A stretch of DNA of 63,457 nt, counting the filler, from Octopus bimaculoides (taxonomy: Eukaryota): NCBI RefSeq assembly GCF_001194135.2. It is 7 parts of 6 records of this genome, joined end to end, with 100 filler letters (N's around TTAATTAATTAA, not from the genome) between each part and the next. Parts side by side here need not be neighbours in the genome. Positions count along the whole stretch, not along the records: positions 37,256 to 43,387 come from NC_068983.1; 6 more parts are not named here. One strand, written 5' to 3'. Shown here in pieces: positions 39,768-41,648 of this stretch (its first letter is position 1; the number at the start of each line of letters is the position of its first letter). A program made the position numbers and the translations under genes. Below the pieces are notes generated by a model. That model was given only the letters and a program-made list of their open reading frames with translations. It was not told where the DNA came from and did no database searches.

Positions 39768-39928
39768 GTTGTGTAATTGTGACAGCTCTGATTCGGAATG
39801 GAAAGCCGATGCAGGTGTAATTTCTATAAAAGACGATCTACCTGTCAGACAACTCTTTGCTTCACAACCTTCGCATGCAGAGACTAAATTGACAATTGGA
39901 AAAATATATTGCGCTGACAAACAAATAA
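39768..39928 (+). CDS. internal coding exon (161 nt, phase 2 to phase 1): C-terminal part of a CASPR/Neurexin-IV-type fibrinogen-like domain
   Basis: Acceptor TTCGTTGTTCATAG, consensus donor GTAAGT; translation LCNCDSSDSEWKADAGVISIKDDLPVRQLFASQPSHAETKLTIGKIYCADKQI fits CNCD..W..D.G...K..LPV..TLG.L.C. Confidence 0.85.
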
Positions 39929-41504
39929 GTAAGTTTTGAATTATAACTTTTAAATAGAAAAGTATGTGTATGGAAGTGTGTGCGTGGAAGTGTGTGTGTG
40001 TTAAGGATATTCTCAAGCAAGTTCAAGAAAACAATAGAACTGCCCTTGTGTCTGATAAATTTTGGTTGAGTGATAAATTTAGATTGTCAGGTGCCAGTAG
40101 CTTGAAGTTCAAAGACTGTAGTCTACAGAGTCACCCTCACAACACTGGGTGGCATCACAAGACACTACACGAGCATGACGGCCATTGATTTTTAATGTAA
40201 GGAATATACAGCTCATATACTCCCTCACGTGCAGGGATACGAAAACTTCCGTCCCGCGTTACCGGGAGACTCCGCAATCATTAGAATGATTTCCCAACTT
40301 CAAATAGAATATCGTTGACAGTCTCATCTCTACTTACCTGCAACTCGCAATTGCTAGTTCTTCCCTTTTTGGAAACTACACATATTCTATAGTTTTGGAA
40401 ACTATACATATTCACGTATTGAGACTGAACTTGAAACCATGTGGTTGGGAAGCAAGCTTATTACCGCACAGTCACGCCTGTACATATATATATATATANN
40501 NNNNNNNNNNNNNNNNNNNNNNNNNNNNNNNNNNNNNNNNNNNNNNNNNNNNNNNNNNNNNNNNNNNNNNNNNNNNNNNNNNNNNNNNNNNNNNNNNNNN
40601 NNNNNNNNNNNNNNNNNNNNNNNNNNNNNNNNNNNNNNNNNNNNNNNNNNNNNNNNNNNNNNNNNNNNNNNNNNNNNNNNNNNNNNNNNNNNNNNNNNNN
40701 NNNNNNNNNNNNNNNNNNNNNNNNNNNNNNNNNNNNNNNNNNNNNNNNNNNNNNNNNNNNNNNNNNNNNNNNNNNNNNNNNNNNNNNNNNNNNNNNNNNN
40801 NNNNNNNNNNNNNNNNNNNNNNNNNNNNNNNNNNNNNNNNNNNNNNNNNNNNNNNNNNNNNNNNNNNNNNNNNNNNNNNNNNNNNNNNNNNNNNNNNNNN
40901 NNNNNNNNNNNNNNNNNNNNNNNNNNNNNNNNNNNNNNNNNNNNNNNNNNNNNNNNNNNNTTTTCATTGCATGGCAATTACACTACTAAATGTAATAAAT
41001 GGGTGAGGGTAAAAAGTTGTTTTACCCTTAATTTATACGGCAATAAGAAAATGGAGGGGATCGAAAGGTGGTATTCATCAACTTTTAGACATTATATTAT
41101 GTCTATTTATTTTTTAAAAAAAACAATTATAACAATATACATACATGTATAACATATTATGCTTTTCATATATAATATATAAAATATAAAAATACCAGTA
41201 ATTATTAAAATATATAACGTAGAACATAGAAAGTAGAATAGTTTCTTACAGCTGTTTCAGCCAAGAGGTCATAGTACCCCACTTTACTTCCACCCCTTTA
41301 GTGAACTGAAGTATTTGGTAGATAAGATTAAAGTACTTGTATGTATGTATGTATGTATCTAACAACCAATGATTTTGTCCCCATCAACTCACTCTCATTC
41401 ACATCTGATAAAATTGCTTTTCTAATTCTCATTTGTTTTCTTTTTTTATTTCCTTTTCTTAATGTTAAAATTGTAAGTTAATTATACACTTCTGTCTTTT
41501 GCAG

Positions 41505-41648
41505 ATCTAAATGAATGTGAATTGGGTTTCCATGACTGCCACGTAAATGCCACCTGCCTGGACACCAAGACAGGCTTCGAGTGTTTGTGTAACGAAGGAT
41601 TCCTAGGTCGTGGGACCGGCAAAGTGGCAACTGGACGAGCATGTCCAG
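41505..41648 (+). CDS. internal coding exon (144 nt, phase 1 to phase 1): calcium-binding EGF-like domain
   Basis: Acceptor CTTCTGTCTTTTGCAG, donor CAG|GTAGAA; (N)LNECELGFHDCHVNATCLDTKTGFECLCNEGFLGRGTGKVATGRACP; six Cys, NEC motif, C-x-D-x4-F-x-C-x-C; in frame with exon 39768-39928. Confidence 0.92.

What the first reader, a model, noticed from the sequence alone, without database searches (positions are those of the whole stretch)
39768..41648. Hidden two-exon host gene fragment: CASPR-type fibrinogen-like module joined directly to a calcium-binding EGF
Seen: two exons absent from the ORF track, with canonical splice sites and compatible phases (161 nt ending phase 1; 144 nt phase 1-1), splice to ..LCNCDSSDSEWKADAG..LPVRQLF..IGKIYCADKQI-N-LNECELGFHDCHVNATCLDTKTGFECLC... 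Established: CNCD..W..D.G..LPV..G..C ends the fibrinogen-like module of CNTNAP/Caspr, Neurexin IV and Axotactin, where it is followed by a laminin-G domain. Inference: here it runs into EGF_CA, so this is likely a rearranged or lineage-specific extracellular protein rather than the Caspr ortholog. Flanking exons are not visible (long introns or gaps).
Basis: partly seen in the sequence, partly recalled or inferred. Interest (0 to 1): 0.72.

Follow-up and report, generated by a model that had tools for sequence, protein, structure and literature searches.

The report
Two unannotated exons of mollusc matrix gene

Summary

Exon 1 encodes the last ~53 residues of a ~195-aa module that also occurs once in Caspr/CNTNAP proteins. 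This locus is not Caspr and is not rearranged.

In ~2,600-aa secreted proteins of gastropods, bivalves and a nemertean, seven such modules stand in tandem. The seventh runs directly into the calcium-binding EGF that best matches exon 2. An EGF pair, VWD, TIL, more EGFs, Kazal and TSP1 follow.

The window peptide aligns without a gap across the junction with 10 such proteins. An independent mollusc genomic contig has introns at the same codon positions and phases.

The assembly gap lies wholly inside the intron, and no residue is missing across it.

The Octopus vulgaris relative ("mucus 2", 1,923 aa, ~120-kb gene) has a model that stops inside module 7, just before the CNCD exon. These are therefore probably its missing next exons.

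The module's predicted fold is closest to the fibrillar-procollagen C-propeptide (COLFI), not to fibrinogen. Interest is modest: an annotation gap in an uncharacterised but conserved family.

The parts
39768..39928 (+). Exon 1, 161 nt. It encodes the C-terminal 53 residues (one short helix and four strands in the model) of the seventh and last COLFI-like / Caspr-'FBG-like' module. It starts with the third base of a split codon and ends with the first base of the Asn codon.
   Evidence: AG|...|GTAAGT borders and translation. 68 homologues, best E 8e-30. The best match in each related protein is module 7. Intron positions and phases are the same as in L001 exon ~1105-1265. It corresponds to residues 143-195 of the AF2 model, where block pLDDT is 84-94.
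39929..41504 (+). Phase-1 intron of 1,576 nt as assembled, including the assembly gap.
   Evidence: Donor GTAAGT and acceptor tcttttgcAG. No protein homology inside it. The orthologous intron in L001 is ~2.1 kb.
40499..40960 (.). Assembly gap of 462 N (estimated length), entirely intronic. Its left edge is a (TA)n tract.
   Evidence: Sequence. No residues are missing across it relative to 10 related proteins.
41505..41648 (+). Exon 2, 144 nt, phase 1-1. It encodes one calcium-binding EGF with six Cys, an N-x-N-E-C start, a C-x-D-x4-F-x-C-x-C site, an NAT sequon and a long C5-C6 loop ending ATGRAC.
   Evidence: Pfam EGF_3 1.5e-9 and EGF_CA 5.6e-8, both above gathering scores. PDB sequence hits to NELL2, Notch and uromodulin EGFs. 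57% identity to P0001 1576-1624. Same borders as L001 exon ~3377-3521.

Best explanation
The window holds two consecutive internal coding exons of the local orthologue of a conserved lophotrochozoan gene. That gene encodes a ~2,600-aa secreted protein.

Its domain order is: signal peptide, about five EGFs, seven tandem ~195-aa COLFI-like modules (the same module that Caspr proteins carry once and call 'fibrinogen-like'), three EGFs, VWD, TIL/TILa, three calcium-binding EGFs, Kazal, TSP1 and a Cys-rich tail.

Exon 1 finishes module 7. Exon 2 is the first calcium-binding EGF after it. They are joined by a phase-1 intron that contains the assembly gap.

Shown:
- exon borders and phases;
- homology;
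- a gap-free alignment across the junction with 10 related proteins;
- identical intron positions in a second genome;
- the domain order of the relatives;
- the truncated Octopus vulgaris model.

Inferred:
- The exons are transcribed and spliced in this animal.
- They continue the octopus 'mucus 2' gene.
- The whole protein works as a calcium-stiffened, disulfide-linked extracellular polymer of mucus or matrix. VWD/TIL and the Cys-rich tail would drive multimerisation as in VWF and gel-forming mucins. The COLFI-like modules would be the binding or assembly units, by analogy with procollagen C-propeptides.
For: - Splice sites and phases.
- Domain identity: exon 2 is EGF_3/EGF_CA above Pfam cut-offs.
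- Homologues: exon 1 finds ~2,600-aa proteins of Babylonia, Mercenaria, Dreissena, Pecten and Lottia ('VWFD domain-containing protein'), a 2,065-aa Lymnaea protein and a 5,886-aa Lineus protein.
- Module position: those of about 2,300-2,660 aa and the Lineus protein show e1-like hits spaced as seven modules. In every case the last module gives the best match and is followed within 1-4 residues by the best match to exon 2. For example P0001 1519-1573 and 1576-1624.
- Alignment: one search is gap-free across the junction, with 49% identity to P0001. The window keeps all 15 invariant columns, including every Cys.
- Second genome: contig L001 has the same two exons with the same split codons (xxA|ACNCD...KPF G|AT ATC GAT GAA TGC...CCA G|gt), 51% identical in exon 1.
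- Rest of the protein: VWD 1e-28, TILa, TIL, EGF_CA, Kazal_2, TSP_1.
- Octopus relative: 'mucus 2' CAI9720372.1 is 37% identical to P0001's modules over 82% coverage. It ends ...KMCTCGAERRCGGTGDRQTVLNRQVVFC, inside module 7 just before the CNCD exon. Its gene spans ~120 kb.
- Fold of the module: AF2 pLDDT 88.7, pTM 0.84. Foldseek gives procollagen III and I C-propeptides at E 1e-6, TM 0.55-0.60 over ~225 columns. Fibrinogen scores only TM ~0.3.
Against: - There is no transcript or junction read for this species. No protein in the collections contains these exons.
- The species of the window is not established.
- The DNA across the gap is unread.
- The upstream rest of module 7 and the downstream EGF/VWD exons are not in the 6-kb piece, so an intact full gene is not shown here.
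- The link to 'mucus 2' rests on where that model stops, not on shared sequence.
- The functional model is by analogy only. No member of the family was found characterised in the literature searches.
- Pfam did not detect a cystine knot in the tail.
Confidence: 0.85

Rival explanations
1. The two exons are relics of a decaying or partial gene copy (a pseudogene or segmental-duplication remnant) and are no longer expressed.
For: No protein or ORF call in the collections contains them. The O. vulgaris model stops before them. The introns are full of transposon debris and microsatellites.
Against: Both reading frames are intact, and all four splice sites are canonical. Every Cys and all 15 invariant alignment columns are retained. 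Intron positions and phases are conserved. A model truncated at an exon border in a 120-kb gene is a common annotation failure.
Confidence: 0.08
2. One reading: a rearranged or lineage-specific protein in which a Caspr-type module was newly fused to an EGF.
For: The module is homologous to the Caspr module. In Caspr it is followed by LamG, not by EGF.
Against: The same junction, with the same neighbours, occurs in gastropods, bivalves and a nemertean. Intron positions in a second genome are identical. Module-to-EGF adjacency also occurs in a jellyfish protein.
Confidence: 0.03
3. The exons belong to the Caspr / Neurexin IV orthologue, and a LamG exon is hidden in the gap or elsewhere.
For: Motif similarity to Caspr: E 4e-12 to the tick protein and 32.7% identity to pike CNTNAP1.
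Against: The best matches are module 7 of the seven-module family, not Caspr. Exon 2 is the family-specific EGF (GFHDCH...A[NT]GRxC) and abuts exon 1 without missing residues. The 462-N gap could hardly hold a ~180-aa LamG together with its splice sites. Exon 1's phase-1 end fits exon 2's phase-1 start.
Confidence: 0.01
4. A scaffolding error put two unrelated contigs side by side across the gap, so the exons are not neighbours in the genome.
For: The gap is unread and its left edge is a (TA)n tract, a typical contig break.
Against: A chance misjoin would have to bring together the next exon of the same gene in the right order, strand and phase. The same arrangement is seen ~2.1 kb apart in L001.
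Confidence: 0.02

Closest known systems
Seven-module mollusc/nemertean secreted proteins: Lottia gigantea V4AG22 'VWFD domain-containing protein', Pecten maximus XP_033732371, Mercenaria XP_053408175, Dreissena XP_052258852, Babylonia XP_076456113, Lineus XP_064643492, and Octopus vulgaris 'mucus 2' CAI9720372.1
   Same: The window peptide aligns end to end with the end of module 7 plus the following EGF, at 34-49% identity. It has the same Cys pattern and family-specific motifs (LYC[AS]..., GFHDCH, A[NT]GRxC). Intron positions match those in a genomic relative.
   Different: Only 101 of ~2,600 residues are visible here. The octopus model lacks exactly this part. None of these proteins has a described function.
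'Fibrinogen-like' module of Caspr/CNTNAP (tick CNTNAP5-like KAM7315062.1; fish CNTNAP1 such as A0AAY5KQ95)
   Same: It is the same ~200-aa module, alignable over its full length, with the same C-terminal CNCD..W..D.G..LP..G.L.C signature that exon 1 encodes.
   Different: Caspr has one copy, placed between an EGF and a LamG domain, in a neuronal transmembrane protein. Here it is the seventh of seven copies and is followed by EGFs and VWD in a secreted protein.
Fibrillar procollagen C-propeptide (COLFI, PF01410; PDB 4ae2, 5k31, 6fzv)
   Same: It is the best structural match to the whole module (Foldseek E ~1e-6, TM 0.55-0.60). The profile matches the first ~100 positions. Pfam COLFI hits 11 of 26 modules.
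   Different: Sequence identity is only 11-13%. There is no collagen triple helix. Pfam does not cover the C-terminal part that the window encodes, and exon 1 alone has no Pfam hit.
Fibrinogen C-terminal domain (PF00147; fibrinogen beta/gamma, angiopoietin, tenascin)
   Same: The first ~57 residues of the module match at E down to 6e-8.
   Different: The similarity stops there. The structural match is TM ~0.3, and the region encoded in the window has no counterpart.
VWF / gel-forming mucin type polymers and cbEGF arrays of fibrillin, fibulin, Notch and NELL
   Same: VWD-TIL and a Cys-rich tail are present in the relatives. Exon 2 is a typical calcium-binding EGF.
   Different: No PTS mucin domain was seen. 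Only one VWD was detected, and Pfam detected no cystine knot.

Membership tests
Seven-module COLFI-like/EGF/VWD family (Lottia V4AG22, O. vulgaris 'mucus 2') | The end of module 7 is directly followed by the family's first post-module calcium-binding EGF, with no intervening residues. | tested here: met
   Gap-free alignment with 10 members. Best-match coordinates are adjacent in each.
Seven-module COLFI-like/EGF/VWD family (Lottia V4AG22, O. vulgaris 'mucus 2') | Conserved intron positions and phases around these two exons. | tested here: met
   L001 has identical split codons at all three borders that could be compared.
Seven-module COLFI-like/EGF/VWD family (Lottia V4AG22, O. vulgaris 'mucus 2') | The rest of the architecture: N-terminal EGFs, modules 1-6, VWD, TIL, Kazal, TSP1. 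| not testable with these tools
   None of it lies in the 6-kb piece.
Caspr / CNTNAP / Neurexin IV orthologue | A single FBG-like module followed by a laminin-G domain. | tested here: not met
   The next coding sequence is an EGF joined in phase. Caspr-type order was verified in P0010 for comparison.
Caspr / CNTNAP / Neurexin IV orthologue | Discoidin (F5/8 type C) domain, four LamG domains, a transmembrane segment and a cytoplasmic tail. | not testable with these tools
   These would lie outside the piece.
Caspr-type 'FBG-like' module (domain level) | C-terminal signature CNCD..W..D.G....LP.......G.L.C, homologous to the Caspr module. | tested here: met
   E 4e-12 to tick CNTNAP5-like. 32.7% identity over 55 aa to pike CNTNAP1. 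Full-length module alignment.
COLFI (PF01410) | Pfam match and procollagen C-propeptide fold. | tested here: inconclusive
   Exon 1 alone has no Pfam hit. Whole modules of relatives hit COLFI in 11 of 26 cases, and only in its N-terminal part. The predicted fold matches 4ae2/5k31 at TM 0.55-0.60.
Fibrinogen_C (PF00147) | Match over the globular domain, including its C-terminal P subdomain. | tested here: not met
   Only profile positions 1-57 match. Foldseek TM is ~0.3. The window part is not covered.
Calcium-binding EGF (PF07645) | Six Cys, a D/N-x-D/N-E/Q-C start, and a Pfam score above the gathering score. | tested here: met
   33.3 bits against 27. NLNEC start and CLDTKTGFECLC site.

The most novel reading that the evidence does not exclude
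The family would be an undescribed class of lophotrochozoan polymer-forming mucus or matrix proteins. In it, seven tandem procollagen-C-propeptide-like modules, the same module that Caspr carries once, would take the place of mucin PTS regions as the functional body. The octopus copy, currently annotated only as a truncated 'mucus 2', would be a major secreted component. A corollary is that the Caspr 'fibrinogen-like' domain would be better described as a COLFI-fold domain.
Probability: 0.25. Interest if true: 0.5.

Novelty: new member of a known kind. Interest (0 to 1): 0.3.

Why it matters
In practice this is an annotation repair. Two coding exons are missing from gene models, and the Octopus vulgaris model of the same family breaks off exactly where they should follow. 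Cephalopod catalogues therefore probably split or truncate a ~2,600-aa secreted protein.

Biologically, it points to an uncharacterised family conserved between molluscs and nemerteans, built from seven copies of the domain known from Caspr. It also suggests that this domain is a procollagen-C-propeptide-type fold rather than a fibrinogen domain. That is of some interest to people who work on extracellular-matrix evolution and mollusc mucus. It opens no long-standing question.

Tried and rejected
- Searching the joined 101-aa peptide in the word-indexed 5.8-billion set gave no candidates. This only showed that the exons are unannotated.
- Searching with the alignment of module 7 plus EGFs (A3) was swamped by generic EGF-repeat proteins such as fibulin and fibrillin. 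It cost one capped search. Its only use was P0123, which led to the genomic contig L001.
- PDB sequence search with exon 1 alone gave nothing.
- Pfam on the other open frames of the piece gave only one RVT_1 fragment.
- Rfam found no match.
- DNA for the O. vulgaris gene could not be fetched because the gene range (~120 kb) is too long. The proposed continuation could therefore not be checked base by base.
- Literature searches found no description of the family. They covered the Lottia locus tag, COLFI+VWD+EGF in molluscs, Caspr FBG against C-propeptide, and the octopus mucus proteome.
- dN/dS against L001 was not attempted, because at 51% amino-acid identity synonymous sites are saturated.
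- Chance ORF was rejected on E-values. The Caspr orthologue was rejected on the following domain and on the best matches.

Full report
**1. What is in the sequence**

The piece 37256-43387 is AT-rich eukaryotic DNA, 21-49% GC in 500-nt windows outside the gap.

- On the + strand, 39768-39928 (161 nt) is flanked by ...ttgttcatAG and GTAAGT.
- 41505-41648 (144 nt) is flanked by ...tcttttgcAG and GTAGAA.
- In the only open frames they read LCNCD...ADKQI and LNECELGFHDCH...GRACP.
- Exon 1 ends with one base (A) and exon 2 starts with two (AT), which gives Asn at the junction.
- Exon 2 again ends with one base.

**2. The gap**

- The 462 N at 40499-40960 lie in the middle of the proposed intron. 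They begin 570 nt after the donor and end 544 nt before the acceptor.
- No coding frame has to cross them. The long 'ORFs' listed across the gap are N-to-X artefacts.
- The left edge is a (TA)n tract, a typical short-read contig break.
- Whether the two flanks are truly adjacent cannot be read. The comparative evidence in section 4 makes any other arrangement very unlikely.

**3. What the two exons encode**

- Exon 2 is a calcium-binding EGF. Pfam gives EGF_3 at 1.5e-9 and EGF_CA at 5.6e-8, both above their gathering scores.
- Its nearest solved sequences are NELL2, Notch and uromodulin EGFs.
- It has six Cys, an NLNEC start, a C-x-D-x4-F-x-C-x-C site and an unusually long C5-C6 loop.
- Exon 1 has no Pfam hit and no PDB sequence hit.
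- A full HMMER scan of 1.84 billion representative proteins with its 53 residues gave 68 hits at E<=1e-3 and 11 at E<=1e-10.

**4. The family**

The top hits, by their sources' names, are:

- uncharacterised proteins of about 1,800-2,660 aa from Babylonia, Mercenaria, Dreissena, Pecten, Lymnaea and Lottia ('VWFD domain-containing protein');
- a 5,886-aa protein of the nemertean Lineus;
- a 2,604-aa protein (P0001) assembled from ~8.5-kb transcript-sized contigs of public sequencing runs.

How the exons map onto these proteins:

- In the members of about 2,300-2,660 aa and in the Lineus protein, the exon 1 motif recurs every ~195 residues, giving seven modules.
- In every one of them the last module is by far the best match. 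It is followed within 1-4 residues by the best match to exon 2. Examples are P0001 1519-1573 and 1576-1624, and Lineus 2071-2130 and 2131-2177.
- In an alignment with 10 such proteins the window peptide runs across the exon junction without a gap.
- It is 49% identical to P0001 and keeps all 15 invariant columns, including every Cys.
- Nothing is therefore missing between the exons, and nothing coding hides in the assembly gap.

**5. Independent genomic confirmation**

Two short ORF-call proteins from one 51.8-kb ENA contig matched exon 1 (P0016) and the EGF (P0123). Fetching that contig as L001 showed the following.

- It holds the genomic copy of a species close to P0001's, 78-91% identical.
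- It has an exon xxA|ACNCD...KPF+G of the same 1+53 codons+1 layout.
- About 2.1 kb further on it has an exon AT-ATC-GAT-GAA-TGC...CCA-G|gt.
- All three comparable intron positions fall in the same codon positions and phases as in the window.
- Exon 1 is 27/53 identical to it.

This is the strongest available substitute for junction reads.

**6. Architecture of the whole protein**

In the relatives the order is signal peptide, ~5 EGFs, seven modules, three EGFs, VWD (1e-28), TIL/TILa, three EGF_CA, Kazal, TSP1 and a Cys-rich tail. Pfam did not call a cystine knot.

**7. What the module is**

- A 26-module profile matched PDB sequences only at its N-terminal end. Fibrinogen beta/gamma, angiopoietins and tenascin matched over positions 1-57, down to 6e-8. 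Procollagen I and III C-propeptides matched over positions 2-100, at 8e-5 to 1e-3.
- Pfam hit COLFI in 11 of 26 modules and Fibrinogen_C in 6 of 26, both only in the N-terminal part.
- An AlphaFold2 model of P0001's module 7 was confident, with pLDDT 88.7 and pTM 0.84.
- Its best structural matches were all procollagen C-propeptide chains, at E ~1e-6, TM 0.55-0.60 and ~225 aligned columns.
- Fibrinogen domains reached only TM ~0.3.
- The module is therefore best described as COLFI-like with a fibrinogen-like first subdomain.
- The window's exon 1 encodes its last short helix and four strands.

**8. Relation to Caspr**

- A tick protein named contactin-associated protein-like 5 matches exon 1 at 4e-12.
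- Pfam on its pieces shows LamG and EGF before the module and LamG-EGF-LamG after it. The module itself has no Pfam hit.
- Fish CNTNAP1 proteins match the modules at 1e-15 to 1e-18. One matches exon 1 directly.
- Caspr has one copy followed by LamG. Here the best matches are to module 7 of the seven-module family, and the next exon is that family's EGF. This is not the Caspr orthologue.

The same module is also shuffled into proteins with other partner domains:

- C-type lectin domains in a brittle star;
- SRCR domains in an acorn worm;
- Link, CUB and SRCR domains in bichirs;
- TSP1 repeats in one further protein whose source was not looked up;
- EGF arrays in a jellyfish, where module-to-EGF adjacency recurs.

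**9. The octopus link**

- A search with P0001's module region returned 'mucus 2' of Octopus vulgaris (CAI9720372.1, 1,923 aa), at 37% identity over 82% of the query.
- Its model has modules 1-6 and the first ~145 residues of module 7. These include the module-7-specific FIQPSK.V.PFFVYCD and CGG-insert signatures.
- It ends ...CGGTGDRQTVLNRQVVFC, immediately before the position of the CNCD exon.
- The last residues look like read-through into an intron. That is my inference.
- The gene spans ~120 kb, and no other gene is called within 10 kb.
- The window's exons are thus the part that this model lacks.
- Whether the window is O. vulgaris, another octopus or another mollusc could not be established. 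The DNA of that locus was not retrievable.

**10. Mechanism**

Shown: two in-phase exons that encode the end of a COLFI-like domain and a calcium-binding EGF, inside a conserved secreted multidomain protein.

Inferred from established knowledge of the domain families:

- Calcium-binding EGF pairs form rigid rods.
- VWD-TIL assemblies and Cys-rich tails drive disulfide multimerisation in VWF and gel-forming mucins.
- Procollagen C-propeptides are calcium-binding assembly domains.

The most likely role is therefore a polymeric mucus or matrix glycoprotein whose seven modules provide binding or assembly surfaces. No experimental work on any member was found.

**11. Rivals**

- A decaying gene copy cannot be excluded without expression data. 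It is disfavoured by the intact frames, the canonical sites, the retained invariant residues and the conserved intron positions.

**12. Verdict**

The finding is ordinary biology that annotation missed: a new (unannotated) member of a database-known but uncharacterised family. Interest is about 0.3.

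Noticed in passing
window 38012-39224, - strand: A decayed non-LTR retrotransposon fragment in the intron upstream of exon 1. Reverse-transcriptase homology (Pfam RVT_1, E 1.6e-9, for 38142-38573) is spread over at least four shifted open frames, so the element is broken by frameshifts.
   Followed up: partly
window 39231-39479: A long (ATT)n microsatellite of 83 units with ACT and GTT variants, directly next to the retrotransposon fragment and ~290 nt upstream of exon 1. 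It creates spurious long poly-Y/I/L/N open frames.
   Followed up: partly
window 40200-40498 and 41996-42230: SINE-like segments. The one at 40425-40498 (...accatgtggttgggaagcaagcttattaccgcacag...) ends in the (TA)n tract at which the assembly gap starts. From memory it resembles a very abundant octopus SINE. This was not verified with any tool.
   Followed up: no
window 41900-41995: A compound (CAT)n-(CAG)14-(CAT)n microsatellite ~250 nt downstream of exon 2. It gives poly-Q/H/S/A open frames that are not genes.
   Followed up: partly
window 42579-43098, - strand: Two adjoining open frames in different phases. They look like the C-terminal half of a Tc1/mariner-type transposase (motif ...SPDCNTLDYYVWG...). 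No Pfam hit even at E 0.1, so the call rests on motif reading only.
   Followed up: partly
window 42214-42241 / 42406-42433: A 28-nt inverted repeat, 89% complementary, with 164 nt between the arms. It may be a small foldback or MITE-like element.
   Followed up: no
P0125 (Octopus vulgaris CAI9720372.1, 'mucus 2'), C-terminus: The gene model ends inside module 7, apparently by read-through into an intron. Several internal modules also look shortened. The N-terminus carries four near-identical ~146-aa EGF-containing repeats. The model probably needs re-annotation.
   Followed up: partly
L001 (ENA ERZ21867824 ctg94826l) 1-13566: A contig deposited with a metagenome assembly is mollusc-type nuclear DNA. 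It has five collinear exons of this gene (P0001 residues 1522-1779). Its prokaryote-style ORF calls (P0016, P0123) are exon fragments.
   Followed up: yes
P0010 (Ixodes scapularis KAM7315062.1) residues 785-991 and 1508-1714: The tick Caspr-like model contains the FBG-like module and the start of the next LamG twice, with identical sequence. This is probably an assembly or annotation duplication.
   Followed up: no
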